From assembly GCF_003918875.1 (NCBI RefSeq), contig NW_025765018.1, positions 1-64,000 of the forward strand: 64,000 bases of DNA, written 5' to 3'. Source of the DNA: Haliotis rubra (lineage: Eukaryota). The stretch's first letter is position 1. Each line of letters starts with the position of its first letter. A program made the position numbers and the translations under genes. A model generated the notes under the pieces. That model saw only the letters and a list, made by a program, of their open reading frames with translations. It ran no database searches and was not told where the DNA came from. Positions 20,147-47,700 of the stretch are shown piece after piece.

Positions 20147-21177
20147 GAAATTTACAAAACTGAGAAATTATCACATCTGTACTATAATAGGATATTGACT
20201 AGGATGTTGGTGACATACGTTACGTGTAGGCAATATGTTAAGTAGTGAGTGAGTGAGTTGGGTTTTATGCCGCATTTAGCAATAATCCCGCAATGTCACT
20301 CAGTTTGTCTCAAATCTAAAATAGACAAAACTGTTAACACTGCAAGTAAAATTGCTGGAGTCAAATCTGAGTGTTCAAGCTGTCAGAATGATATCTTATC
20401 CAACCCTCAACTTACATTAGGAATACAACCTCCTCCCTTCAGCCCGCCGCTAAGTTCCAATTGTGAAAACTATGAGAGCCCGGACATATATTATTCCAAA
20501 TACCATATCTCTTTTAAACAAATGTGAAGATGCTTACTATCATGGCGGGGAAAAACAGACATGTTCTTCATACATTGCACCCATGTGGGGTATCGAACCC
20601 GGGACTTCAGCGTGACGATCGAACACTTCAACCGCTGGGCTACCCTATCGCGCCCTATATGCAAAGTATAATACTCCGCTAAACAATTTAAGTGTAGTTA
20701 CGTTCTGATAGCCACGAAAACGTTATGATGTTACTTTATTTATCTCTGATGTTTATGAAATCAGGGGTATTTAGGGTTGCAAGTAGTCTTAAGTAAGCTG
20801 TGTTGTTCGTAAGAGGCGACTTGTTTAGCCGAACTGGTTATATTAATCATAAGAACCCCGACAGTAACTTGCTCATAATATCAGTCACTGGTTTGTCAGA
20901 TGTAAACACTGTTGTATGAATGATGTGGATGATGAGTGTCGTTATATTTTTAAATATACACATATTACAAAAGAAAGATCAATGTATATACAAGCTTCCT
21001 TTATAAAAAGACCAATATGTTAAAATTTAAATCACTCTTTACATGTAAAAAGATATCTGTTATGAAAAAGCTCAGTTAATTCTGTTAATATATCATACAA
21101 ATTGTCAAATCTTCCGGCGAACTACTATGCCGCCATGATATTATCATATATTGTCATTTGCACCTCATATGCCGAGA

Positions 21178-21348
21178 GGGCGGCGGAGTAGCCTAATGGT
21201 TAAAGCGTTCGCTCGTCACGCCGGAGAACCAGGTTCGATTCCCCACATGGGTACAACGCGTGAAGCCCATTTCTGGTGTCCACCGCTGTGATATTGCTAG
21301 AATATTGCTAAAAGCGGCTTAAAACCATACTAACTCACTCAGTTACTC
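21178..21348 (+). mobile_element. tRNA-derived SINE (family A)
   Basis: A box tagcctaatgg, B box ggttcgattcc, (ctca)n tail, TSD atgccgag. Confidence 0.9.
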
Positions 21349-21499
21349 ATGCCGAGGATATCGGCCTGAGCGTAATAACGTTTGTTCTGTTCTGGACTTG
21401 TTTCCCGTTTCACAAAGCTATCGTAGCGTTGCGACAGTCGTACTTCTACTGTAATTCTATGCTGTACATTCTGAGAAACCTTAGATCGTTCAATGTTAG

Positions 21500-29079: not shown

Positions 29080-32000
29080 TTTTTCTTTATCCTGACTCAT
29101 GTATTATTGCTTGTCTCCTTCCTTCCGCGAACGTCAGTGGAACACTTGTATCTCCTTTTTGAAGCTCCCTTCAAAAAAGCAGACGTAAAATCACTACTCA
29201 CCACGAGTTGTCTCCCTCTCCGTTTGGCGGGAAACGGCGCCACCCGTCTTCCCACTCTTCACTCTCTCCTTCTTCGCCCTAGTGGACGGTTGGGAGAGCA
29301 CCTGTGTCTCCAACACGGCACTATATCCTTTGCTAACTTAGTTATTACCCTATAAGTTACCTTTATAAGGTACCTTCTACAATATGGTTTGAAATTTATT
29401 AGCAAATTTGTTTATTCATGGTTTCACGTGATTGCTCAGTTTGTTTACATTTCATGAAAACCTGTTTTCGTTGTAGGTTTAGGTTCTCTGCTGCAGACCC
29501 GCATTATTGTGCCCTAGTTGCAAAACAATATGTACTTCCAGCTCTCGCTGTAAATTATGTTAGCAACTAACAAAAATAATTATTATTTCTCTGTACTTAG
29601 AAACGTGCTAAGGATAAATCCAGGCGGCTGTTACAAGACATGGCTAAACCGTCCCTTAAGAGCTAGTCTGTCGTTGTCAGACAACATACTTCCATCCAGT
29701 GACCTGCCGGAGGCGTCTTCAGAAGATGGGTGTGGGATGAAGTCCGCCCTTATGTCGAAGAAAAGATCTTCTACGTCGGACAACTCCTCAACCCATACGA
29801 AGAAGAAGAGGCCATCTTCGTCGCAGAAGAAGCCTTACACCCCTAAGGCTTCAACGAGATCTACTGGGAGCTCTTCACAGACTACAAAGACCTTCTCTGC
29901 CGAGATCGTCCCGATGGAAGAAATAGGCTTGTACGTAGAACCGCCTATCCTCATCCCAGAGATACTGCATAAGAAGAAGAAGCAGGCCTCAGCAACGGTA
30001 ACGTCAGCACAGTCTGAGTTACCTTCTACACTGGCAGGGGTGGTGGGGTAGCCTAGTGGTTAAAGCGTTGGCTCGTCACGCCGAAGACCCGGGTTCGATT
30101 CCCCACATGGGCACAATGTGTGAAGCCCATTTCTGGTGTCCCCCGCCGTGATATTGCTGGAATATTGCTAAAAGCGGCGTAAAACTAAACTCAGTAAGTC
30201 AGTCAGTCTACACTGGCAGCAGGGACCCATGAGGTACAGCGATCCCTGGACCATATCGCTACCCTCTCAGATGCGTCATCTCTACAGTCGTCACAGACAT
30301 TCAACCCTGGGACCTTCATGCAGCAATTCTCCCAACAGATGATGGACCTGATGGAGAAGGGCTTCGGGCAGGAAAGGACCTTGCATGATGGTCAGGCAGC
30401 CGCCTCTCATGCTCAAGTCAGGACCAGTGCTGCACGAAAGATCCCGAACCGGTGGTGCATCTGAGATATCTATAAGAGGTTCTAGCTCTAGGACTAAGAG
30501 CAGACCTACCCTGCACGATGTCAACGAACCTGCGTGAAGGAAGGGACATTCATCCGACCAAAATAGATCGTCATCTGATAATGAAGCTAATGAAGCTCCT
30601 TCACACAGGCTACCTACATCACAGAGAGGCTTACACCTCCAAGAAGATACAGAGAGACGTCTCAGGACTCAGACCCTCAACAAAAATCTCTCACCTGCGC
30701 GAAGGTCGTCAGATAGATCATTAAGAATGTCACCATCACTATGCAGGTCGTCACGGGATTCAACACACAGGAATATATTGCCTTCGCGAAGGCAACCCCG
30801 GATGCGTACACGTAGACGCTCCCCTCCACGCAGGTCGCCATACAGAACTCCTCTTAGAACTACACATAGTTCTACGTACGCATCTCCACACAGATTGCCA
30901 CGCAGATCTCCATGATCTCCAAAATATTGGATGGCTAATGGACTGGACCTAGCGTCACCCGCTAAAGAAAAGAATGAAGCATTCACGTGCCTAATGAAGG
31001 ACGATGATGTAGACACAATCACCCTACCTCCAATTGACCCGGTCTCGGACGTACCTGAGGACCTTGACGCAGCCTTCAGGAAAGCAACAAAGTTCCAGTC
31101 TTCAAATATCCCACAGTTCAACGCAAAAAAGCCGCAACACTCTCAGATGCGTCACTACATCTGCAGTCGTCGCAGACCTTCAAAACGGGTATTTTTATGC
31201 AGCAAATGATGGACCTAATGGACGGTTCGCGCAAGCCTAAAGGACGAAGCTGCGGGAGGTAATCGGCATCAGAAATGTGTGAAGGATCACGCACTTGACA
31301 GTCATGCTCTGCAGTTTCGACGATTAATATAGACGTCATTGGACCATCCAACTTCACCCTCAGACCTTGATCTCCGTTGTGAGCCAATACGAAGGAACTC
31401 TTCAGCATGGAGGAAGAGATCTTCGCCTGCGCAAAGAGAGAGGGACACGTGTTGAAGTTCAAGAGGGGTACTCTTGTCCGAATTCATCACCTGAGCAGAT
31501 CTTCAGACTGAATCCCGGACGGAATTCACATCGTTGAGAAATTTTAGATAGATATATCTACATCAGAAGATAATAACGGGACTCATGTCCATATAGAGAT
31601 CTTCACTTGCGTACAGATCTTCAGGTATTCACATTGGCATGGTTCAGCACAGCCTTGCTAAGCCTATGAAGTTACAAAGTCAACATATTCCCAACGTCCA
31701 AGCTTGGGAATTCCAACACTCAGGAGAGTTACAGCTTTAGAGTCCATATGCACGTCTAAGACAGACTAGCATGAGTGATAAGACCCAGTACTTGTAAGGG
31801 CGTACTCGTACATAAGAAGGGACGCTTCTCCACTTGATGCATGCATCAAGAGATGGAGTTGTTAAAATCCACATATAATGTTAACAGAAGCAAGGACCAA
31901 AAGTTGACAATTGTGGTCCCCCCATCAGAGAAAGCTGGAAGTAAAGGGTTACAGCAGCAGCAGAGCCTAGCAGTAAATTGAAGTGCTACTAGATAGTTCC

Positions 32001-34050: not shown

Positions 34051-35082
34051 CGGAATAAATCGACGACTGTCAATTCGGAATCCGTACACTGTACCTAATC
34101 GGGGTATCCAGGTTTAACTGCGGGCAAACTGATGCCTTGCCCTATAAAAGTGAGTATTGCGCGCAGCCATACACACACACGTGCATTCACGTCAAAATAA
34201 ATTGGTACTAATGCCAAATGGGATATTTGGTCAGATTTTCAGAAGCATAATTACTCATAAAGACCTCAGATTATAACTGCCTTAAGAAGTATGTGTATTT
34301 CCAGTGTTTCATATAAGATTACCTCATTATACTAGCTCGTCTGATTACAAATTGCTCCCTTTTAAGCTAATCGTGGATAAATTATGCATTGTGAACGTAT
34401 CATTTCTACAGCTATTTCTTTTAATGAGACAAAGATATGGTAATGTCACTTTTAACCCTTAAGTCCATTATGACCAGCTTAGGTTCTACTCTCCCCATGG
34501 AGTCGAGAACGAAATATCGGGTGCACACTGTCCAATTGTTATGCTGTTTCGGGAATACACAAATGGTGTTGATGGTGATTATTATGATGATTATTTACAG
34601 ATTAAAAATATATGAAGGAAAGCGTCTGGTGACACAGGCACAGTTGGGCGCGTCGTCAGCTCATGGTCCTTGCCGCCTCTACCCGCAGCTCAGACATCGT
34701 CTACTCGAACCCCCCAAGAACCAAGGAGGATTTGAAGTCTCCTCAACACTGCAGCCTGCGGCATTATCCAAGAGTCTCCAAAAGGCTGTATTCCCCCTCG
34801 AGACCAGAGAACAACTTACAGAGTCTGGACCAGACAACCTAGTGATCACAGCATTGATCTACGCAATTAAGATACGATGACATGTGTCAACCAAGTCAGC
34901 GAGCCTGACCACCCGATCCCTTTAGTCGCCTAAATCTTCACGGTTGGGCAAAGTCTTGTACAGTGTCATAACATTTAAATGACATAATCTACATGTCTCT
35001 GTTACATTTTGATGCAAAACCACACACTGACAGATTCATCCTGTCCCACTTCATGCAGGACCGCCGCCATATAGCTGGAATA

Positions 35083-35142
35083 GCTTAGTGGTTAAAGCGT
35101 TCGCTCGTCACGCCGAAGACCCGGGTTCGATTCCCCACATTG
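35083..35142 (+). mobile_element. 5' half of a family-A SINE split by the foldback element (3' half at 46200-46273)
   Basis: ...ggttcgattccccacattg ends at 35142. The SINE resumes atttgtggtgtccaccgccgtgatattgctgg at 46200, and the missing middle is inverted at 35221-35246. Confidence 0.9.
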
Positions 35143-35220
35143 GTATGGAATACTGTAAGGGACATTCTCGCGATCTCGCATTCTCGCGATCTCGAGAATG
35201 TCCCTTACAGTATTCCATAC
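35143..35220. mobile_element. 78-bp palindromic mini-element made of the two termini of the foldback element
   Basis: gtatggaatactgtaagggacattctcg ... cgagaatgtcccttacagtattccatac. Confidence 0.9.
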
Positions 35221-37819
35221 AAATGAGCTTCACACATTGTACCAATGTATGGAATACTGTAGGGACATTCTCGCGATCTCGCATTCTCGCGATCTCGTCC
35301 TTTGGAAACAAGCTAAAATGCCAAAAGTGCGAGAATGCGAGATCGCGAAACTGCGAGATTTGGCCAAATCTCGCATTCTCGCGATCTCGCATTCTCGTGT
35401 TTTGGTACATAGCACTTTTGTCAAAGTCGAGATCGCGAGAATGCGACATTTGTACATGCTGTCAAATCTCGCATTCTCGCAATCTCGACTTGTCAAATAT
35501 GGCCACAAAACACGAAATCGCGAGAACACGAGAATGCGACATTGCATTTTTCTCGCGTTCTCGCGATCTCGCGATCTCGCGTTTTTAGACGCTGTCGGTG
35601 CGCATGCGTAATATCATAAGGTCAAGGCGCATGCGTGTCTTAGTAGCGCTATGGTCATGCTTCTTTCGTGCTTTTCATTTCCCAAGTAGCATTTAGCAAA
35701 ATTATCACATAGCTTGAAAATGCTATGTAAATTTATACACGATGTAGGGTAGTGTATATAAGTCCGCTGCCGTTGTTTCCTACATTGTTTTCCTATGTGC
35801 CTTAAAATCCTCAACGTGTTTAATATAATTTAAGAAACGAAATTGTGAATATGAATGTCAATAAAAGTGAAAACATGAAAGTGTCCGGAAGCTGGATATA
35901 CATTAACGTCAGTGAGTGATAAAATAGTGCTCAAAGCCGCATTAATTCGCAGCTACACCGTCAGTTATACAAATAATCACAGACCAGTGAGTTTCTCCAT
36001 GATGAAATATCATATACGGCTAGCATATTCATTCAGACAAAATTCTAACGAGGCCAATTTGTAGCACTCGGCTAAAATGAGCATGTCTGATGTTTTACTC
36101 GACACCATATTCGCTACTTTAATAGATTTTCTTCCGCTCCCGCCTGACTACAAAACATCCTGCTTTATACTATGCTTTTGTCTTCAAGTTCCAAGAAATA
36201 GAAAGCATTTGTATCGCTAATAGTTGTGTTCCTGTGGCAGCCATGATATGGCGGAGTTCAATGTGTTATTAACCACAGACTACGGGTTATGAGTGAGATA
36301 TCTGTTTTATTTCCATATCGTGGTGGAAGAAGACACCCTGTAATAACGATAATATACACGATATATACAACATAAAATCACATCTGATGAACATGTCATC
36401 ATAATAAATATAGTGCATAAATGTGCCTATCAACAGTCATATACCGGTATTACGCGATGCAATATAACACAGGTGACTCACGTGATCACGTGTTTGCAGT
36501 GATATACAAAATGAGTGTTGACATAAAGACTTATAATAATACATCGTATAATAATGAAATAGACAATAGATACTGTACAAATAACCTATCCTGTGGGTTA
36601 CACGAGAATGGGTTCGCGAATCCAGCAGCCGAACAGTCATCGCATGCACTAATCCCATATAAGAATCTTTGTCAAGTTCATACAATATACATGGTAGATG
36701 AGATGTATCAATCTTACATGATACAGAAAATAGTTACCAAATAACAACTACTAGCCAGCATATTGACAGGACATATAGAAAACTACCATTAGCACATTCA
36801 TACACGTTAAATGGCATATTGTGTATTGACTTTTATTTTGTTAACATGGGAATATTAATACCTATTTTGTGTAATGATTAATATTAGGGTTTAATTTACT
36901 ATGTATGTTATATTATAATGCATAATAACTAACCTTTGATTCTGACCAAACTGTCACACAGAACTGTACATGAAACACAAAGACACCCGTGAAGGTCCGG
37001 GTTAGAAGGTATCTTCAGGAACCCGTGTTTGTCGTAAGAGGCGATTAACGGGATCGGGTGGTCAGGCTCGCTGACTTGGTTTACACATATCATCGGTTCC
37101 CAATCGCGCAGATCGATGCTCATGATGTTGATCACTGGATTGTCTGGTCCACACTCGATTATTTACATACAGCCGCCATATAAACCAAACTCAATAACTC
37201 ACTCTCTGAAACACAAGGACAAGAGGCAGCTGAACTGACAACTAATTGCAACTTAAATGCATAAAGAATTCGTCGCCTGCGAGACCACTATATCCTGATA
37301 TAAGACAATGATGATTAGTTATTCATTTACGTACACAATATACAACCACCTAATTCGCCCCTCTTACATTCCTACTTTCTTTACTTCATGAACATGCATG
37401 ATGCATGTGAATCGAATCCTTCTACAGTAAATGTACACAGGTGCCTTAAAAAGTTCGATTAGACAAAAATTAAATGTAAATAAACATACCTCCGACCTCC
37501 CATGATTTTTTTAGAAATTAATCAAACTCTGTCTATTAATTTATTGCGGCCTTACCTTCACAAGCTCGGCATGCTAATATTGGAAATTAACCCCCATTCA
37601 CAGCCCGGGGCACGTGCATTGCTTTAAATAAGTGAGTGAGTTTGGCTTAACACGACTTTCAACAGTATTTATCTTTCAGTTATATCACGGATTATCAGTT
37701 CGATGTAGGATGAAACCCACCAGCATAGGTTTTTGGCACGCTCAAGGGACGCAACTCTATTGCCACGACTGAGCTACCCGTGATCACAGTTCAAGATGAC
37801 TGTATAGGTAATTGGTAGA

Positions 37820-38720
37820 AAAACGCGAGATCGCGAGATCGCGAGATCGCGAGATTTGTCAAATGTCGCAATCTCGCGTTCTCGCGTTCTCGTGTTTTTG
37901 AAAATCGTTACACAGAACTGTATGGGCAATTGGCACAAAAGCACGAGAACGCGAGATCGCGAGATTTGTCAAATGTCGCAATCTCGCGTTCTCGCGTTCT
38001 CGTGTTTTTGAAAATCTTTACAAAAGAACTGTATGGGCGAATTGAAACAAAAGCACGAGAACGCGAGATTGCGAGATTTGTCAAATGTCGCAATCTCGCG
38101 TTCTCGCATTCTCGTGTTTTTGAAAATTGTTACATAGAACTGTATGGGCAATTGAAACAAAGCACGAGAACGCGAGAACGCGAGATCGCGAGATTTGTCA
38201 AATGTCGCAATCTCGCGTTCTCGCGTTCTCGTGTTTTTGAAAATCGTTACATAGAACTGTATGGGCAATTGAAACAAAACACGAGAACACGAGAACGCGA
38301 GATCGCGAGATTTGTCAAATGTCGCAATCTCGCGTTCTCGCGTTCTCGCGTTTTGAAAATCGTTACACAGAACTGTATGGGCAATTGGCACAAAAGCACG
38401 AGAACGCGAGAACGCGAGATCGCGAGATTTGTCAAATGTCGCAATCTCGCGTTCTCGTGTTTTGAAAATCGTTACATAGAACTGTATGGGTAATTGGCAC
38501 AAAGCACGAGAACGCGGATTGCGAGGATTTGTCAAATGTCGCAATCTCGCGTTCTCGCGTTCTCGTGTTTTTGAAAATCGTTACATAGAACTGTATGGGC
38601 AATTGGCACAAAACACGAGAACACGAGAACACGAGATCGCGACATTTGACAAATCTCGCGATCTCGCGTTCTCGTTCTCGTGCTTTATTGCCAATTACAG
38701 TTCTATCAACGATTTTAAAA
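37820..38720 (+). repeat. ~110-117 bp hairpin-forming satellite (~7-8 units) at the inner end of the left arm
   Basis: cacgagaacgcgagatcgcgagatttgtcaaatgtcgcaatctcgcgttctcgtgtttttgaaaatcgttacatagaactgtatgggcaattgg. Orientation flips at ~38638. Confidence 0.93.
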
Positions 38721-40439
38721 GGGGCACTGATCCAGAGGGATTAATGTTTCTCGCCAACAGTCTTATTTCAAATCCTAGCTGCAAGCTGGTCAGTACCTGC
38801 TTCCTCGACCGTAACGGACTCGGGCACTGGGCTACTCTCCACCTTGGCAGAATTTCTTCAACATAAACATCGGGACATTAGGAAGTGCGGATGCAAATCA
38901 GATGCCGTTATTTGAAGATATACCCGGTAGTTCTTATAAAGTATCCCAGCAGTGTAGGCGTTTCGGATTTTCTTATGCCTGGATTTAATCATTTCATGTT
39001 AAAATAGGATTTCTATTACCAGTGTATGAAATAGTGCACGTCCCACCGCCCGAGACGGGCTAGATTTCTGACGGACGGTCTAGATTTACAGCTAGCCAGC
39101 CCGATGATCTGGTAAAACTGTTCCATACATATCTTGGTGTCTGGTCTGGTTAAATCCATTTTGGGCTGGTAACATTTGGAAGTTACCAGCCCTGATGTCT
39201 GGCTGGGTTTTGGGCTTATTTCAGACACTGTCAATCATCACCTATGATTTTAAAACACACTATTTTGTACTTTGGGTGTACTACGCTCGAAACGAAGCAC
39301 CCGGATACCGAACCCAGTCAGAGCGGGTGGGTGTGCACTCAGAAGTGTAGTGAGTGAGTTAAGATGTAAAGCCACTTGGGCAATATTTCCAGCCATATCG
39401 TGACTATATCAAGTTATACATTAATATAAATGAAAGGTAAATTATAAAACCTCTCTACGAAGGACAGTAAAACAACTAGATTATCACAGTTAGAAATTTA
39501 AAACTAGTAACTAAATATAAAACATTTTAACTACATGACTATACAATATAAAAACAGGCTATAGATTGCCAACAACTGAAGGTAGATCACCATACTGGGG
39601 ACCATTGGGACTTACAATACATTTGCTTCCTGCATGGACCCTATAGCTGGATGTACATCATCCCTTCAGTTGTTAGCAATTTACACACATCTAGCCATAC
39701 ATTTTAGTTCAAAATTTACTTTGAATGTTTTTGGGACTTACGTACCCTCTCAAGAGGACAATCATTTTACGGTATTTGAACCGGTGTCGGCCCGGGAAAG
39801 CGAAATTTCAATATTCCCTATTCCCGGTAAAGCGAAAACCAAAGTTGTGCTAGAAGTGCCACCAAAGCGAATTGCTATGAAAACATTGGATTACCGTACT
39901 TCATATTAGCGCGCGACCCCAATACTCCTTCTGTGAGCGCTTAACTGAGATGAAGTTTTTTTTGTTTCAAGTTTCAGACCCTACTTATCTATGGCTTTAT
40001 TAATTCATGGAACGAATTAGTATCATTGTTAAACGAACTTTACATGGCCGAATTTGTCAAAGTTTCGTCAACCTTTTTCAAGTAAAATATCTAGTCTTAA
40101 AATGTATCCAAGTTCATTTTAAGATTGTTTTATAAACACTTTAATTGATGCATCATTTAGTCATCTTGTTGTACATTTGGTAATGTACTCCTTTGTTATA
40201 CTCATGTACCACCGATATCTGTTTTCCCGTGTATCATAAATTGTAACTATGTAATGCGAATAACGAATTGAGTGCCTTTACATTAAGTGCTATGACATTT
40301 TCTGTTTTTAGATAACAATGTCATGAATAAATATGCATTTAAAGTAAAACTCATTTGGACTTTGGACTTAAAATGTTTATGGATGCAGACTTGATTTCGT
40401 CACTAAATGGCTGGAATAATGGCGATGTGACGAAAAGCA

Positions 40440-40570
40440 TAAAAAGACGTGTTTATTATCCCCTCAAAGGCTAGAAATCGCCACATTCCTCTCGAGTGTT
40501 TGTTTAAATGTTTTGACTGCATGGTCCTACCAATCATGTTATATGGTTGCGAGGTGTGGGGACATTCAAA
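40440..40570 (+). mobile_element. Small LINE post-RT fragment
   Basis: LFKCFDCMVLPIMLYGCEVWG, a typical PxLxYGxExW motif of non-LTR RT C-termini. Confidence 0.6.
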
Positions 40571-41319
40571 TACATGTATGTATTTCTTATGCAACAATAA
40601 AGTTCCGTTCGTATCCTCAAAACAGTGTCGGCCATAAGTTTAATACAGCCACTACTACTCCATAGCTGTAACTCGTGTTTGGTGGTATAAAACATACACA
40701 TGTTATTTGTTATAATTCACTTCATGATCAGTTATATTAATGAATTAATAACAGATATCATTAGTAGTAACACCACTTAGATTGCCCGACAAATGTTCCC
40801 ATTTGGCATTCTCGTGTCTTCAGTAAATACTCAACATTATAAATTAAGGTCTGATGCAACAAATGTATTACGTTATGTAATATGCCCATGGAAGTGCAGG
40901 AAGAGGAATTATCACCTGAATTATAAAAACAAACATCGATCAAAGGATTAACCGATAATACGCTGACTGATTGATTAATTTTATCATGCACATCGGATTT
41001 GTCAAAGCTAGTGTTTATGTAATGCTGCGTTTACACTAGGCCACGATTAGGCCACGATGGGGTATTCCCGGAAGTAGAATTTTAATGTTACAGTATAGTC
41101 TCCGTGATGTTGTGCCGATGTTGTTATAAGGGATTAAGTCACTGGGTGCTGTGAAATTCTGAACTATGTTGTGGACTATGATTTCCATTTGAGTTTAGCT
41201 CACTGAGATTATAATGATACTGATTAATGTGTTCACTCAATCAGTGTCATTCAGTACTATACATGTCTTACATATTGTATAAATACCATCAAGTTACAAT
41301 AGCTAGTATCATTTTCACA

Positions 41320-41600
41320 ATGGCTCATGCACAGTTCAATTACAAGTTCCTTCCTACTTCACGTGGTGGTAGGTACTTCCGGCTGAAGGATACATTACAG
41401 AGTAAAAGAGGATAAAATTCTTGTTGGAGGAGCAAAACATTAATGAACAGAACATGTTACAATACATGGTACAGTGCTAGGCAGAGACTTCCCCAAAGAA
41501 AAAGAAATATCAAGACCTCCAAAGAGAGAACTGTCCACCCTGAAACACAGACTTGTGGTTGACAACACTGATATGTTGTATTACTTAGACATGTATTACA
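41320..41600 (+). mobile_element. Possible deleted MULE-type transposase remnant
   Basis: FLPTSRGG (FLYWCH-like start) is joined to PKKKKYQDLQKR..STLKHRL..YYLD (MULE C-terminus-like). By-eye similarity only. Confidence 0.3.
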
Positions 41601-42976
41601 AGAAACTTGCTTAAAATAATGCAATAACTGTAAAATGAATTGTGACTTTATAGTGATATTGATTAAGTAATTACTTAACTATGTCAGAATTGAATATGTA
41701 TTTGTAATTAAATCTTTGAAGGGCATTTCATCAGGTGAAGGAGCAAGCATACGCTCCGAAACGTCGTGTTAGTCACAATAAAGATGTTGACGTCCATAAA
41801 TCTTGCCTTTCTTATATTTGTAATTGATAATGTTTGGTGGAATATTTGATATATTAAAATTTCATATGACATGTTTTTATGTTGTGATTAAGAATGGGGA
41901 CACCAAATAAATTATGTCATGAAATGTCAAATATCAGTTTAGACTTATTTCATTTCTTAACCACTTCAACTATTCTTATCAACCTTGTGCCTGTATAAAC
42001 ATAGAATTGCCTTTGTTCGACTTGAAGGTAATGCCCCAACCTCCACCCCACAAGCTCTCTCCTATGGGAACTAACCGCCACCATTATGTCGATCTTACGC
42101 GAACCAAAATATCGTATTAGATCTTCATGATTGTGGAACATTTTGTATATTTTTCCCCTTCTTGACGCTCTTTTCCGATTTCATAAGCTCTGATTGTATC
42201 TGTTACGCATTCTCACGATTGGATATCCGACCAGTTATGCTTCAATGAAGATCTGTTGCGATTATTTTACGATCTGTAGCGACTTTTCACGACCGTAAAA
42301 ATATCACATTATGAAAATTTCCAATATATAGTGGCGATAACTGGTTTCGAACCCGCAACCTTTCGCTCGGCGGCTTTATCCACTAGGCTACTAGAAATAC
42401 GACTTTTTAAAACTTTAAAATTACAATTAATTTGTAAATACCATTTTCTTATGAAACAAGGAATTGGAATTTAGTGTAACCATAGTTGTTTGTAGTGTCT
42501 GATTTCACTTTCACAAGAGAAAAATTCAAATCGGATGAAAAGTAGGTCATTGTCTGAATTGATTGATGAGACTCATGTTTCGGTTTGGTAATGATACAAC
42601 TTACTCTAGGTCGCACTTAGGGCGTGTGTGTGTGAAATATGATTCACGTTGGCAATCTATACAATGTCTAGATATTAAAGTCACGCTATATATTCACTAT
42701 AAGTATTAAGCAGTTCGTGCGCTTCTTAATAAGTTTCAGAATGCATCAAAATATTATAATAAACTAATTATGATTATAAAACAAAATGTAAAGACGTACA
42801 CTGACTTCGTTATTTTTCAGTCCTAACATTTTACCACTGGCAGATGGTTAAACTTCAAATGTTTTCATTTCCTATCATCATAATGAAGATGGAAATATTA
42901 TCAAGTAAAAAAGATTTCATGTTTGTTCATCAATCTATACTTATACCATCAATTAGGCATGCGGGCGGCGCAGCCG

Positions 42977-43745
42977 ATACAGTTCTATGTAACGATTTTC
43001 AAAAACACGAGAACGCGAGAACGCGAGATTGCGACATTTGACAAATCTCGCGATCTCGTGTTCTCGTGCTTTTGTGCCAATTACCCATACAGTTCTGTGT
43101 AACGATTTTCAAAAACACGAGAACGCGAGAACGCGAGATTGCGACATTTGACAAATCTCGCGATCTCGCGTTCTCGTGCTTTTGTGCCAATTACCCACAC
43201 AGTTCTTTGTAACGATTTTCAAAAACACGAGAACGCGAGATTGCGACATTTGACAAATCTCTCTATCTCGCGTTCTCGTGCTTTTGTGCCAATTACCCAT
43301 ACAGTTCTATGTAACGATTTTCAAAAACGCGAGGAAGCGAGAACGCGAGATTGCGACATTTGACAAATCTCGCTATCTCGCGTTCTCGCGTTCTCGTGCT
43401 TTTGTGCCAATTGCCCATACAGTTCTACGTAACGATTTTCAAAAACACGAGAACGCGAGAACGCGAGATTGCGACATTTGACAAATCTCGCGATCTCGCG
43501 TTCTCGTGTTTTTAACCAATTGCCCATACAGTTCTATGTAACGATTTTCAAAAACACGAGAACGCGAGAACGCGAGATTGCGACATTTGACAAATCTCGC
43601 GATCTCGCGTTCTCGCGTTCTCGTGCTTTTGTTTCAATTGCCCATACAGTTCTATGTAACGATTTTTAAAAACGCGAGAATGCGAGATTGCGACATTTGA
43701 CAAATGTGGCGATCTCGCGATCTCGCAATCTCGCGATCTCGCGTT
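42977..43745 (-). repeat. Same satellite, inverted (~7 units), at the inner end of the right arm
   Basis: aacgattttc anchors at ~42991, 43101, 43211, 43312, 43431, 43540 and 43658. Confidence 0.93.
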
Positions 43746-44254
43746 TTTCTGCTAAATACCTATACAGTCATCTTGAACCGGGATCATGGGTAGCTCAGTC
43801 GTCTGAGGCGTCGCAATGGAGTTGCGTCCCTTGAGAAACCTATTTTGGTGGGTTTCATCCTATATCGAGCTGACAAGCCGTGATATAACTGAAAGAAAAA
43901 TACTGTTGAAAGTCGTGTTAAGCCAAACTCACTCACTTATTTAGAGCAATGCACGTACCCCGGGCTGTGAATGGGGGGTTATTTCTAATATTAGCTTGCC
44001 GAGCTTGTGAAGGTAAGGCCGCAATAAATTTAAATACAGAGTTTGTTTATTTTCTAAAAAAAATTGGAGGCGAGGATTATAATAATTTACATTTTATTTT
44101 TTACTTTTTAAGGCACCTGTGTACAATTTCTGTCGAAGGATTCGATTCACATGCATCAAGCATGTTCAGTAGTGCTACGTTTGTGGAGTATTTCATCAAG
44201 TAAAGAAATTAGGAATGTAACATGAATGAACTATTATTATTAACATCATAGGAT

Positions 44255-44777
44255 ATTTTATATTTATATATCGCACATATCCACGCAACTACTCCTTGCT
44301 CAAGGCGCTGGTATATTTTTCCTCGTTTATTTGGATGTCAATCTCAACGGCACATAGTATGATCAATCTCAACTCCCTTGGGAGTATACAACGCTTGCTG
44401 CCTCTAGGCGCACCGAGTTTATTGTGACCTTCTCATCCTAACGAGATACCCATTCCAAGCTGGGTGGACTGGAACACATAGTCACAGTACTTTGTCGAAT
44501 TTGACTGCACGTTGATGTACCCGCAACTAAGTGTTTGCACGTATTCATGTGACCACTGTCTGGTCATATACCAACTGATTCGTGGGTTCTTTTAAGTGCA
44601 CAGGGTTGTCTACTGTGCACTTCGGGTTGTGCACTTGTGCACTTGTGACAACACAGAAAGAGTCTGCACACAAAGTTGAGTGCAAGATTTTTACACCCGG
44701 TCACAGATGGGCTCGATCCCGACACCTCAACCTCGCTGGATCACTAGCCGGCGCTTTAACCAGCTCGCCCACCGCGC
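44255..44777 (-). mobile_element. Full-length ~520-bp SINE (family C): tRNA-like head, conserved central body, L2-like tail; present only in the right arm
   Basis: Minus strand: gcgcggtgggcgagctggttaaagcg..gggatcgagccc head; gtgcacttaaaagaaccc and ccagtccacccagcttggaatgggtatc blocks; cagcgccttgagc...gcgatatataaat tail. Confidence 0.75.
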
Positions 44778-47700
44778 GAGTGGTTGTATATTGTGTACAT
44801 AAATGAATAACAAATCATCATTATCTTATATCAGGATATAGTGGTCTCGCAGGCGACGAATTCTTTATGCATTTAAGTTGCAATTAGTTGTCAGTTCAGC
44901 TGCCTCTTTACTTTGTGTTTCAGTGAGTGAGTTTAGATTTACGCCGCACTCAGCAATATTCCAGCTATATGGCGGCGGCCTGTAAATAATCGAGTGTGGA
45001 CCAGACAATCCAGTGATCTGCGCGATTGGGAACCTTTATGCACTATATTTATTATGATGACATGTTCATCAGATGTGATTTTATGTTGTATATATCGTGT
45101 ATATTATTGTTATTACAGGGTGTCTTCTTCCACCACGATATGGAAATAAACAGATATCTCACTCATAACCCGTAGTCTCCACTTTATCATGGCTGCCGCA
45201 GGAACACAAATATTATTGGTACAAATGCATTTCTATTTCTTGGAACTTGGAGACGAAAGAATAATGTAAGACAGGGTGTTTTGTAGTCAGGCGGGAGCGG
45301 AAGAAAATCTATTAATTAATTTGTTATGGACTAAACTAGCGAGTATGGTGTCCAATAAAACATCAGACATGCTCATTTTAGCCGACGGCTAGAAATTGGT
45401 CGGTTAGAATTTTGTTTGAATGATTATGCTAGCCGTATATGATATTGCATCATGGAAAAACTCACTGGTCTGTGATTATTTGTATAACTGACGGTATAGC
45501 TGCGAAATGATGCGGCTTTTAGCACTATTTTATCACTCACTGACGTTAATATTTTTTTCCAGCTTCCGGACACTTTCATGTTTTCACTTTTATTGGACAT
45601 TCATATTCACAATTTCGTTTCTTAAATAGAATTTTACATGTTGAGGATTTTTAAGGACATACGAAATTGTAACAACGGGAACGGACTTATATACTCTACC
45701 CTTGTCATCCTGTATGTAAATTACATGATAGCATTTTCAAGCTATGTGATAAGTTTGCTAAATGCTAGTTGGGAAGTGAAAAGCATGAAAGAAGCATGAC
45801 CACAGCACTACTTAGATACGCATGCGCCTTGACCTTATGATATTACGCATGCGCACCGACAGCGTCTAAAACGCGAGATCGCGAGAACGCGAGAAAATGC
45901 AATGTCGCATTCTCGCGTTCTCGCGATTTCGTGTTTTTATGGCCATATCTGGCAAGTCGAGATAGCGAGAATGCGAGATTTGACAGCATGTACAAATGTC
46001 GCAATCTCGCGATCTCGACTTTTGACAAAAAGTGCTATGTACCAAAAACACGAGAATGCGAGATCGCGAGAACGCGAGATTTTGGCCAAATCTCGCGTTC
46101 TCGCGATCTCGCATTCTCTACTGGCATTTTTAGCTTGTTTCGAAGGTCGAGATCGCGAGAATGCGAGATCGCGAGAATGTCCCTTACAGTATTCCATACA
46201 TTTGTGGTGTCCACCGCCGTGATATTGCTGGAATATTGCTAAAGGCGGCGTAAAACCATACTCACTCACTCACTGCGCACGTATACAACACTGACGCATT
46301 ACTTCAGCTTGACCACCAACATTGCTAATATCAACACAACAGACGTGATGTAAATGCTTACAAAACATTTATTAAAACTCGAAAAATACAATTATATGAT
46401 TTTTTCTCTGCAATTATTAGGGAAACTCACTATCATATAACCTTCTATTATAATAATATTCAAACTCAATTACAATACACAGCCCCAAACATAAACAAAC
46501 AATATCTCACCTATAAATCAGAAAGCCTTGTAAAAATACATCCCTATCTATGCAAAATTTGCAATAAAACGTTTGTAAACATTTGCCTACCTGGTAAATG
46601 GTATATTTATTTCGGTTTAGAATGGGAAATATTCGCAAGAAAACGGCTACGCGTTCGGCTTCAAATGAAATTAAGAGACTATCAATTCGGTGTAACATTC
46701 ATCTAATTTCAAAACACAGTACGTTTATCTCCTAAGTAGAATCTAGCATGCTCTTTTCACCACGATTTCAAAGAAAATAACACATAACTCTTTGCTGGAA
46801 ACAATCAAGACACAGGTAAAGCTTTCACAGTTAACATTTGGAGGGCATTTCCAAATTATAAGCATCAGTAGCTCACAAAGGCCAAATGCAATTCCGTATT
46901 TCTCTGGAAACATATGCTCTTCGCCTTTTTCGTGCGAACAGTTGGGTAGTATTGGCATGCAGGCTACACTCATAAAACCAGGTACCATCGCTATATATTA
47001 GTGGTTTATAAAGACTACCACGGTTCGCGCGCATCAGACACCGAGACCCAGTCTGTATAAAGACCTGCTAATAATATAGTTCGAACCGTTCCCCGCCTCT
47101 GCTTAAACGGAGATTTCTTATAAATATCAGTGGGGGCGTCATCTTTATTTATACAACTAAAACAACAAGAAGCCTGTCCCCATACTTCAGTATCATAACG
47201 GGACGCCTCCGAGCGACGGTCAGATCGATTCAGTTTCGGATACTTCTGTAAAACCTAGAAGTTATTAAAGCTCCATTAAGAAAACGATAAACTTTGTATT
47301 ATCTACTTTGATGAAGGAAAGTCACATATGTCTAGTTAAAGTATTAGTGATTACCATACTACTCTCAAACTAGCTTGGTTATGAGGTAAACCTCTAATTA
47401 TTTATTAGCAGCTGAAAATAGTTGAGTTGATATTATATGATAAATATAAAACACACGGCCATGCCACGGCTCTGTATTAATATACATGTATTATCTTTTA
47501 AGCATCATGTTTGTTTTATGGCAGCGCGTGATCGGTATAATGAAACTCTCAAAAACTGTTTAGTTGTATTGTTTTGTATTGTTTGTGTTCGTTGTGTAAC
47601 GTCACACAATATCCCAGCTATATGGCGGCGGTTTGTAAATTGTCGAGTCTGGACCAGACAACCCAGTGATCAACAGCATGAATGGTGTTTTCTGTCACAA

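What the first reader, a model, noticed from the sequence alone, without database searches (positions are those of the whole stretch)
35083..35260. 26-bp inversion with exchanged 4-bp TSDs: footprint of a foldback-transposon-generated rearrangement
Seen: the host SINE consensus reads ccccacATTGgtacaatgtgtgaagctcATTTgtggtg. Here it is ccccacATTG-[78-bp mini element]-AAATgagcttcacacattgtacCAAT-[11-kb element]-ATTTgtggtg. The middle is inverted, and each element is flanked by one TSD and the reverse complement of the other (ATTG/AAAT and CAAT/ATTT). Established: exchanged, inverted TSDs are the signature of inversions generated by foldback elements such as Drosophila Galileo. Inference: a local hop 22 bp away followed by recombination between TIRs, or a single alternative-transposition event. 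The known SINE consensus makes the reconstruction base-exact.
Basis: partly seen in the sequence, partly recalled or inferred. Interest (0 to 1): 0.75.

Follow-up and report, generated by a model that had tools for sequence, protein, structure and literature searches.

The report
Transposon-made micro-inversion in abalone SINE
A non-coding jumping gene with folded-back ends flipped a 28-base piece of an abalone SINE when its ends struck 22 bases from its own site, leaving a 76-base stub of a second copy; the same scar at a second site makes it a possible clue to how this little-studied transposon class moves.

Summary
Genome copies show that the element starts TATGG and ends CCATA. Its target-site duplication (TSD) is 6 bp, not 4.

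The corrected layout is: CATTGG | 76-bp mini (35144-35219) | 28-bp inverted SINE piece (35220-35247) | 10,951-bp foldback element (35248-46198) | CATTTG. The TSDs are still exchanged and inverted. Both TSD copies carry this SINE copy's private variants.

I found a second locus with the same architecture on contig C2: GGTGTA | 40-bp mini | 86-bp inverted piece | 12.1-kb element | TCTATG. A paralogous empty site confirms it at 84 of 86 bases.

The family is non-coding. It has TA..TA termini and 6-bp TSDs, which are the structural hallmarks of IS3EU/GingerRoot. No transposase was found.

My best reading (0.55) is one alternative-transposition event. Two element ends hit a target 22 bp (80 bp at C2) from the resident copy in the inverting topology, and the partner copy was reduced to a stub. 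The main rival (0.3) is a local hop followed by recombination between copies.

Public short-read contigs could not test the junctions. This is a new variant of a known kind, and interest is moderate.

The parts
35074..35143 (+). 5' part of the host tRNA-derived SINE, ending in target copy a (CATTGG, 35138-35143)
   Evidence: Aligns with the SINE copies at 30034-30215 and 21174-21350. The SINE core is uninterrupted in more than 64,000 genome copies.
35144..35219 (.). 76-bp mini element. It consists of terminal nt 1-51 joined to the reverse complement of nt 1-25 at a 2-bp CG microhomology. It is flanked by a (CATTGG) and by b' (CAAATG).
   Evidence: Its first 51 nt are identical to the reverse complement of the big element's last 51 nt. 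The deletion junction occurs once in the 1.38-Gb genome. As single-stranded DNA it folds into a near-perfect hairpin, -33.2 kcal/mol, z -12.7.
35220..35247 (-). Inverted SINE segment: b' (CAAATG, 35220-35225), 16 bp of SINE core (35226-35241), a' (CCAATG, 35242-35247)
   Evidence: Its reverse complement, CATTGG + 16 nt + CATTTG, restores a continuous SINE between the two flanks. This copy's private variants (ATTGG for ATGGG, CATTTG for CATTTC) are present in both copies of each TSD.
35248..46198 (.). 10,951-bp non-coding foldback element, flanked by a' (CCAATG) and b (CATTTG). Arms lie at about 35248-38690 and 42970-46198. They carry 110-118-bp tandem arrays at 37799-38686 and 42977-43768. The middle lies at about 38690-42970.
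   Evidence: Termini; inverted arms 91-98% complementary; tandem arrays. No ORF has a Pfam match. Copies at C272, C321, C176 and C120 match it at 92-98% along arms and middle. The left terminus lacks one A (TGTAGGG versus consensus TGTAAGGG).
46199..46274 (+). 3' part of the host SINE, beginning with target copy b (CATTTG, 46199-46204) and ending in the CTCA-repeat tail

Best explanation
This is a genuine, base-exact micro-inversion made by the transposition machinery of a non-autonomous foldback DNA transposon family. The family has termini TATGG...CCATA and a 6-bp TSD, which are the structural hallmarks of the IS3EU/GingerRoot superfamily.

Proposed route: a full-length copy sat in the SINE at target CATTTG. 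In one alternative-transposition event, two element ends that did not belong to one free excised element attacked the target CATTGG 22 bp away in the inverting topology. The two ends could be one end from each sister chromatid (hybrid element insertion), or both 3' ends of a copy still tied to its flanks (replicative-type intramolecular attack). Either route gives A-a-[copy]-b'-M'-a'-[copy]-b-Z in a single step. One copy is now a 76-bp stub that keeps both exact termini. It was reduced either by abortive repair or near-precise loss of the foldback afterwards, or during resolution of the event itself.

Shown: the anatomy, the 6-bp TSDs and their exchange, the single-copy state of the targets, the uniqueness of the stub, and the recurrence at a second locus.

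Inferred: the order of events, the source of the two ends, and how the stub formed.
For: 1. The a|TATGG and a'|TATGG junctions are exact to the base, and a is duplicated in inverted orientation. The same holds for b. This is the geometry of a 6-bp staggered strand transfer, matching the 6-bp TSDs of about 30 other copies.
2. A second locus has the same architecture. On C2, GGTGTA is at 505075-505080, a 40-bp mini at 505081-505120, an 86-bp inverted piece at 505121-505206, a 12.1-kb element at 505207-517302, then TCTATG. The empty paralog at C2:465716-465801 holds single a and b and matches the inverted piece at 84/86.
3. In both loci the partner is a locus-specific stub, not a spread MITE. The window junction is unique in the genome.
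4. At C2 the stub keeps only 4-5 nt of the end next to the inverted piece. Recombination with that end in its present state is therefore impossible.
5. No other pair of family ends faces each other within 6-36 bp anywhere in the genome. No un-inverted precursor state was seen (same-orientation scan).
6. The hybrid-element model is documented to give an outcome 'strikingly similar' to ectopic recombination, with exchanged TSDs (PMC2775673).
Against: - The outcome of two ordinary insertions followed by recombination between the copies is identical in sequence. With one partner reduced to a stub, the chimeric-versus-identical test used for Galileo cannot be applied.
- The stub needs an extra step, or an untested resolution pathway.
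- The big element's left end differs from the stub by a 1-nt A deletion, and at C2 the big element's right end differs by one base. So the copies are not strictly identical. These could be later mutations or homopolymer errors.
- No transposase was found, so the chemistry is unknown.
- No read-level confirmation: public short-read contigs did not span the junctions.
Confidence: 0.55

Rival explanations
1. Two ordinary insertions plus recombination. A copy hopped locally to a site 22 bp (80 bp at C2) from the donor copy, giving a[E]a-M-b[E]b. Homologous recombination or template switching between the facing inverted arms then flipped the short spacer. Later one copy was reduced to a stub.
For: - This is the established mechanism for Galileo inversions with exchanged TSDs (PMC2775673).
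- Two foldback copies with 3.4-kb arms separated by under 100 bp would be highly recombinogenic.
- The facing ends of mini and big with the 28-nt spacer still form a strong hairpin, -29.5 kcal/mol.
- MITE-size derivatives of the family with perfect TSDs show the family was recently mobile.
Against: - It needs three rare events at each of two loci.
- No un-inverted close pair was found, although flipping should leave about half in each state.
- At C2 the stub lacks the end needed for recombination, so the flip must predate the deletion.
- Random placement of two of roughly 400 termini within 100 bp in 1.38 Gb is negligible, so it depends on extreme local hopping.
Confidence: 0.3
2. Reversed-ends transposition from a composite. 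A stub and a full copy lay abutted inside one TSD (b[mini]-spacer-[big]b). The two facing ends were cut and integrated into target a nearby. This flipped M-b-[mini] with no new copy and no later deletion.
For: - Worked through on paper, this route gives exactly A-a-[mini]-b'-M'-a'-[big]-b-Z.
- Reversed-ends events are documented for Ac/Ds (PMC1592236 and PMC3744419).
- Abutted ends are the normal reactive substrate in the bacterial IS3 family (PMC3299598).
Against: - No abutted or composite mini-big structure was seen. One search found only the window locus with ends 6-36 bp apart.
- The origin of such a composite at two separate loci is itself unexplained.
Confidence: 0.07
3. Assembly artefact at a hairpin-forming repeat, for example a strand-switch chimera in long reads.
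For: The region is a strong hairpin former, and no public read set could be shown to span it.
Against: - A strand-switch chimera would give b...b' around the palindrome, not a...b' with an exact 6-bp duplication of a.
- Two independent loci obey the same 6-bp logic, and one is validated by an empty paralogous site.
- Private SINE variants are shared by both TSD copies.
Confidence: 0.03

Closest known systems
Galileo (P superfamily) inversion breakpoints in Drosophila buzzatii (2j, 2q7, 2z3)
   Same: Foldback-type elements with long, internally repetitive inverted arms sit at both ends of an inverted segment. The TSDs are exchanged, and the target is single-copy in the non-inverted state (PMC2775673).
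   Different: - The Galileo inversions are cytologically visible chromosomal rearrangements; the pieces here are 28 and 86 bp.
- Galileo has 7-bp TSDs and P-type termini; this family has 6-bp TSDs and TA..TA termini.
- Both Galileo partners are full and chimeric; here one partner is a 40-76-bp stub.
Alternative transposition: hybrid element insertion (P element), and sister-chromatid and reversed-ends transposition (Ac/Ds)
   Same: Ends from different copies or chromatids insert together at a nearby site. This gives an inversion flanked by copies with the new TSD in inverted orientation (PMC2775673, PMC1592236, PMC3744419).
   Different: - Those cases were shown genetically for P and hAT transposases; here the event is inferred from scars only.
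- The superfamily differs, the target distances are extremely short, and the partner copy is vestigial.
Intramolecular replicative transposition ('adjacent inversion') of bacterial Tn3, Mu and IS elements
   Same: The product has the same topology: the segment between the element and the target is inverted, a second inverted copy is present, and the target duplication is in inverted orientation. This comparison rests on established knowledge and was not tested here.
   Different: The bacterial systems give two full copies. A eukaryotic counterpart is not established, and here the second copy is a stub.
[quoted passage not shown]
   Same: Both have 6-bp TSDs, 5'-TA...TA-3' termini and terminal inverted repeats (PMC10045372; PMC6839031).
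   Different: - The described families have TIRs of about 100-150 bp and encode an integrase-like DDE transposase.
- This family has 3.4-kb foldback arms with satellite arrays, and no transposase was found.
Drosophila FB and Mutator-type foldback elements (for example Tm1, Tetris)
   Same: Both have foldback architecture with tandem repeats in the arms.

Membership tests
IS3EU/GingerRoot | 6-bp target-site duplication | tested here: met
   About 30 same-contig terminus pairs have perfect 6-bp TSDs and about 8 more differ at one base. The literature criterion comes from PMC10045372 and PMC6839031.
IS3EU/GingerRoot | 5'-TA...TA-3' termini | tested here: met
   Termini are TATGG...CCATA in all copies. 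The base outside the terminus varies.
IS3EU/GingerRoot | Integrase-related DDE transposase encoded by autonomous members | tested here: inconclusive
   No ORF with a Pfam match in the 11-kb copy. The 22.6-kb copy holds only nested Tc1/mariner and LINE pieces.
Polinton/Maverick | 5'-AG...TC-3' termini; polymerase and integrase genes | tested here: not met
   Termini are TA..TA and no coding capacity was found. Only the 6-bp TSD is shared.
Galileo / P superfamily | 7-8-bp TSD | tested here: not met
   The TSD is 6 bp.
FB / Mutator-type foldback | About 9-bp TSD | tested here: not met
   The TSD is 6 bp. The ~9-bp criterion is from my own knowledge.
TE-generated inversion with exchanged TSDs | Copies of one family at both breakpoints, each flanked by one TSD and the reverse complement of the other | tested here: met
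   Window: CATTGG[mini]CAAATG...CCAATG[big]CATTTG. C2: GGTGTA[mini]CATAGA...TACACC[big]TCTATG.
TE-generated inversion with exchanged TSDs | Each target present once, in direct order, in the un-rearranged sequence | tested here: met
   For the window, the SINE core is uninterrupted in more than 64,000 copies. For C2, the empty paralog at 465716-465801 matches at 84/86. No true allelic empty site exists for the window, because contig C162 lacks the whole SINE body.
Ectopic recombination versus hybrid element insertion | Chimeric copies indicate recombination; identical copies indicate hybrid insertion | not testable with these tools
   One partner is reduced to 76 or 40 bp. The few differences seen (a 1-nt indel, one substitution) are uninformative.

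The most novel reading that the evidence does not exclude
The 'stub + flipped spacer + full copy' scar may be the one-step product of a nick-only, replicative-type intramolecular strand transfer. In this reading the integrase-like transposase frees only the 3' ends. These ends attack a target 22-80 bp away on the opposite strands. Replication forks enter the element for only a few dozen nucleotides (51 and 25 here; 36 and 4-5 at C2). The branched intermediate is then cut and sealed at microhomology. The bulk of the element moves conservatively, and the fork-opened termini are left behind as the stub. That would be the first evidence on the transposition chemistry of eukaryotic IS3EU/GingerRoot elements, pointing to second-strand-uncut chemistry like their bacterial IS3 relatives.
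Probability: 0.15. Interest if true: 0.75.

Novelty: new variant of a known kind. Interest (0 to 1): 0.5.

Why it matters
Inversions with exchanged TSDs are classic evidence that transposons reshape chromosomes, but they are known mainly at the chromosomal scale and for P and hAT elements.

Here the same signature appears at the scale of tens of bases, twice, in a mollusc. The family carries the structural hallmarks of IS3EU/GingerRoot, and I found no description of that superfamily's transposition mechanism in the papers I read. Every junction is base-exact. One locus is anchored by a SINE core with over 64,000 intact copies, and the other has a real empty site. These loci therefore work as natural reaction products.

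They also suggest direct tests:
- whether ends from different DNA molecules or uncut donor strands take part;
- how often such local events occur;
- whether foldback copies collapse to stubs.

Practically, the work corrects the family's termini and TSD length for annotation of abalone genomes.

Tried and rejected
1. Read support. One run search and one lay returned only short-read contigs swamped by SINE and TIR copies. No piece spans 35100-35260, so the junctions are neither supported nor contradicted.
2. Transposase. Stop-to-stop ORFs of the 11-kb copy and of the 22.6-kb C990 copy were scanned against Pfam. This found nothing, or only nested Tc1/mariner and LINE fragments.
3. The mini as a spread MITE. 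Rejected, because its deletion junction is unique in the genome.
4. TA as the TSD (Tc1/mariner-like), or a 4-bp or 8-bp TSD. Rejected by flank comparison across copies and by the one-base mismatch that an 8-bp reading gives at site b.
5. Allelic empty site for the window. Contigs C162 and C128:82-84 kb lack the whole SINE body, so they cannot serve as the empty site.
6. More examples. Scans for facing ends 6-36 bp apart and for same-orientation termini 52-112 bp apart returned only the window locus, unrelated satellites and one unverified candidate (C2013).
The roughly 9 terminus pairs with unrelated flanks and the C221 locus were therefore not resolved.
8. Earlier scan notes by words and by sequence gave nothing on this family.

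Full report
**What is there.** At 35074-35143 the window holds the 5' part of a tRNA-derived SINE, and at 46199-46274 its 3' part. Three things lie between them:
- a 76-bp palindromic mini element (35144-35219);
- a 28-bp stretch (35220-35247) that is the exact reverse complement of the missing SINE core;
- a 10,951-bp element with the same termini (35248-46198).

Removing both elements and flipping the 28 bp restores a continuous SINE. The restored SINE aligns with the two other copies in the window, 156/181 and 147/168 identical over alignments that run on into the flanks. The SINE core around the two sites is uninterrupted in more than 64,000 places in this 1.38-Gb genome. A follow-up note from this scan calls the genome an abalone; I did not check that.

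**Correction of termini and TSD.** A 28-nt terminus pattern matches 387 places in the genome. The element is therefore TATGG...CCATA. With these boundaries, short and long copies alike carry perfect 6-bp TSDs. Examples are ATATTG, CCTAAG, CAGATG and CAAAAT, plus CTTGTG for a 7-kb copy and CGAAAG for a 22.6-kb copy.

Among 223 termini with a perfect 25-nt end:
- about 30 same-contig pairs have identical 6-mers;
- about 8 differ at one base;
- about 9 are unrelated (read by eye).

The corrected layout is CATTGG [mini] CAAATG-16 bp-CCAATG [big] CATTTG. Each element still has one TSD and the reverse complement of the other. This SINE copy's private variants (ATTGG for consensus ATGGG, CATTTG for CATTTC) occur in both copies of the respective TSD. 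That is what a real duplication of this very target predicts.

**The big element.**
- It has inverted arms of about 3.4 kb, 91-98% complementary in blocks.
- Each arm ends inward in a 110-118-bp tandem array.
- The middle is about 4.3 kb.
- No ORF exceeds about 220 codons. The longest are translations of the repeats, and ten ORF pieces gave no Pfam match.
- It belongs to a family of 11-13-kb copies. C272, C321, C176 and C120 match it at 92-98% through arms and middle.
- Many shorter derivatives of about 100-400 bp have their own perfect TSDs. The family is therefore non-autonomous and was recently mobile.

**The mini.** It consists of terminal nucleotides 1-51 joined to the reverse complement of nucleotides 1-25 at a 2-bp CG overlap. 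Its first 51 nt equal the reverse complement of the big element's last 51 nt. Its internal junction occurs nowhere else in the genome at up to 2 mismatches. It is therefore a locus-specific stub and not a member of a spread MITE subfamily.

**A second locus.** Two same-orientation termini 126 bp apart on contig C2 led to a second case:

| Feature | Coordinates on C2 |
|---|---|
| GGTGTA (a) | 505075-505080 |
| 40-bp mini (nt 1-36 + CATA) | 505081-505120 |
| 86-bp inverted spacer | 505121-505206 |
| 12.1-kb element | 505207-517302 |
| TCTATG (b) | directly follows |

A paralogous copy of the region 40 kb away (C2:465716-465801) is empty. It reads GGTGTA-74 bp-TCTATG, and the reverse complement of the spacer matches it at 84/86. 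The spacer starts with CATAGA (b') and ends with TACACC (a'). So the architecture A-a-[mini]-b'-M'-a'-[big]-b-Z recurs with an empty site in hand. In both loci the longer part of the stub abuts the new junction a and the shorter part abuts b'.

**How common.**
- A script over all 70 fetched loci found the signature only at these two places.
- Genome-wide, no other pair of family ends faces each other within 6-36 bp.
- A scan for same-orientation termini 52-112 bp apart returned the window, unrelated satellites and one unverified candidate at C2013.
- No un-inverted close pair was seen.

**Reads and alleles.** Public runs were available only as short-read contigs. The SINE and the inverted repeats swamp them, and no listed piece spans the junctions. 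The structure therefore rests on the assembly.

An artefact is unlikely for three reasons:
- a strand-switch chimera would give b...b' rather than a...b';
- two loci obey the same 6-bp logic;
- one locus has an empty site.

The nearest relatives of the window locus (C162 and C128:82-84 kb, 94-98% identical in the flanks) lack the SINE body and both elements. They carry only a 5'-truncated SINE tail plus about 470 bp that the window lacks. They show that the locus varies, but they do not provide an empty site.

**Superfamily.** Six-bp TSDs with 5'-TA...TA-3' termini and terminal inverted repeats are the stated hallmarks of IS3EU and GingerRoot (PMC10045372; PMC6839031).
- Polinton shares the 6-bp TSD but has AG..TC termini.
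- Galileo/P has 7-8-bp TSDs, and FB/Mutator-type elements have about 9 bp (that figure is from my own knowledge); neither fits.
- I therefore file the family as IS3EU/GingerRoot-like on structure. The defining transposase was not found.

**Mechanism.**

*Shown.* Two element ends are joined exactly to the two sides of a 6-bp staggered cut at a, with a in inverted duplicate. The other two ends sit at b. The targets were single and direct before the event.

*Inferred.* Working the strands through gives this product from a single resident copy at b, if the two attacking ends are not those of one free excised element. Two sources are possible. One end could come from each sister chromatid, which is hybrid element insertion. 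The Galileo literature says this gives an outcome 'strikingly similar' to ectopic recombination (PMC2775673). Alternatively, both 3' ends could come from a copy whose other strands stay joined to the flanks, which is a replicative-type attack. Both routes yield two inverted copies around the flipped spacer.

The stub then needs either a later collapse or formation during resolution. A later collapse could be abortive gap repair after excision, or slippage across the base of the foldback. The 2-bp and 1-bp microhomologies fit both.

I prefer a single alternative event (0.55). My reasons are the recurrence of the full architecture, the absence of un-inverted neighbours, and the extreme closeness of the targets.

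The main rival (0.3) is a local hop followed by recombination between the facing arms. It gives the same sequence and is the accepted route for Galileo. It needs more steps. At C2 the flip must also have preceded the deletion, since the stub retains only 4-5 nt of the relevant end.

A reversed-ends reaction from an abutted mini-big composite also gives the product on paper. It has no supporting precursor (0.07).

The bacterial IS3 family cuts single strands and works through figure-of-eight and abutted-end circles (PMC3219604 and PMC3299598). This makes a second-strand-uncut chemistry conceivable for the eukaryotic relatives, but nothing here tests it.

**Verdict.** The phenomenon is a known kind (transposon-made inversion with exchanged TSDs) in a new form:
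- inversions of tens of bases;
- a vestigial partner copy;
- recurrence at a second locus;
- a mollusc foldback family of IS3EU/GingerRoot type.

Interest is moderate. It would rise if the scars prove to be one-step products that reveal the family's chemistry.

**Limits.**
- There is no read-level confirmation.
- No autonomous element was found.
- The census is restricted to perfect termini and to fixed distance ranges.

Noticed in passing
L058:565-785 (G000 C221:150264-150484): A 103-bp mini is followed by an inverted copy of its own left flank (about 13 nt, 2 mismatches). A 5'-truncated second copy follows, ending at TTTACC. This palindromic-flank topology differs from the two main loci.
   Followed up: partly
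G000 C120, C495, C564, C1646, C2070, C2121, C2484, C2500, C2626 (terminus pairs listed): About 9 of about 45 same-contig terminus pairs have unrelated 6-mers at their two ends. These could mark larger exchanges (inversions or deletions), or they could be unrelated half-elements.
   Followed up: no
G000 C2013:783089-783169: A 14-nt terminal stub, 55 bp, then a terminus in the same orientation. This is a possible third scar. The flanks could not be fetched.
   Followed up: no
223 perfect termini genome-wide: The base 8 nt outside the terminus, which is 2 nt beyond the TSD, is C in 91 cases, G in 81, T in 39 and A in 12. Target choice therefore seems to reach beyond the duplicated 6 bp. Many TSDs resemble GTWWAC.
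   Followed up: partly
window 35060-35090 and 46260-46290; L044 (C162) and L045 (C128:82-84 kb): The related loci carry only a 5'-truncated SINE tail with an 8-bp TSD (CATGCARG) plus about 470 bp that are absent from the window. In C128 at about 83.0-83.3 kb the 56-bp tail-plus-TSD unit forms a 5-copy minisatellite. The window's full SINE joins the old tail at ...CTGGAATA|GCTTAGTGG.
   Followed up: partly
window 40443-40634 (+) and 42280-42471 (+), inside the big element's middle: By eye, short ORF pieces look like the C-terminal region of a LINE ORF2 and a tRNA-like/SINE fragment. This suggests the conserved middle of the family is a mosaic of captured repeats. There was no Pfam match.
   Followed up: partly
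G000 C1646:908433-913070: An unrelated satellite with units of about 30 bp happens to contain the 12-mer TATGGAATACTG.
   Followed up: no
L031-L033 (G000 C990:1396092-1418763): A 22.6-kb family copy with perfect TSD CGAAAG carries nested Tc1/mariner (DDE_3, HTH_Tnp_Tc3_2) and LINE fragments.
   Followed up: yes
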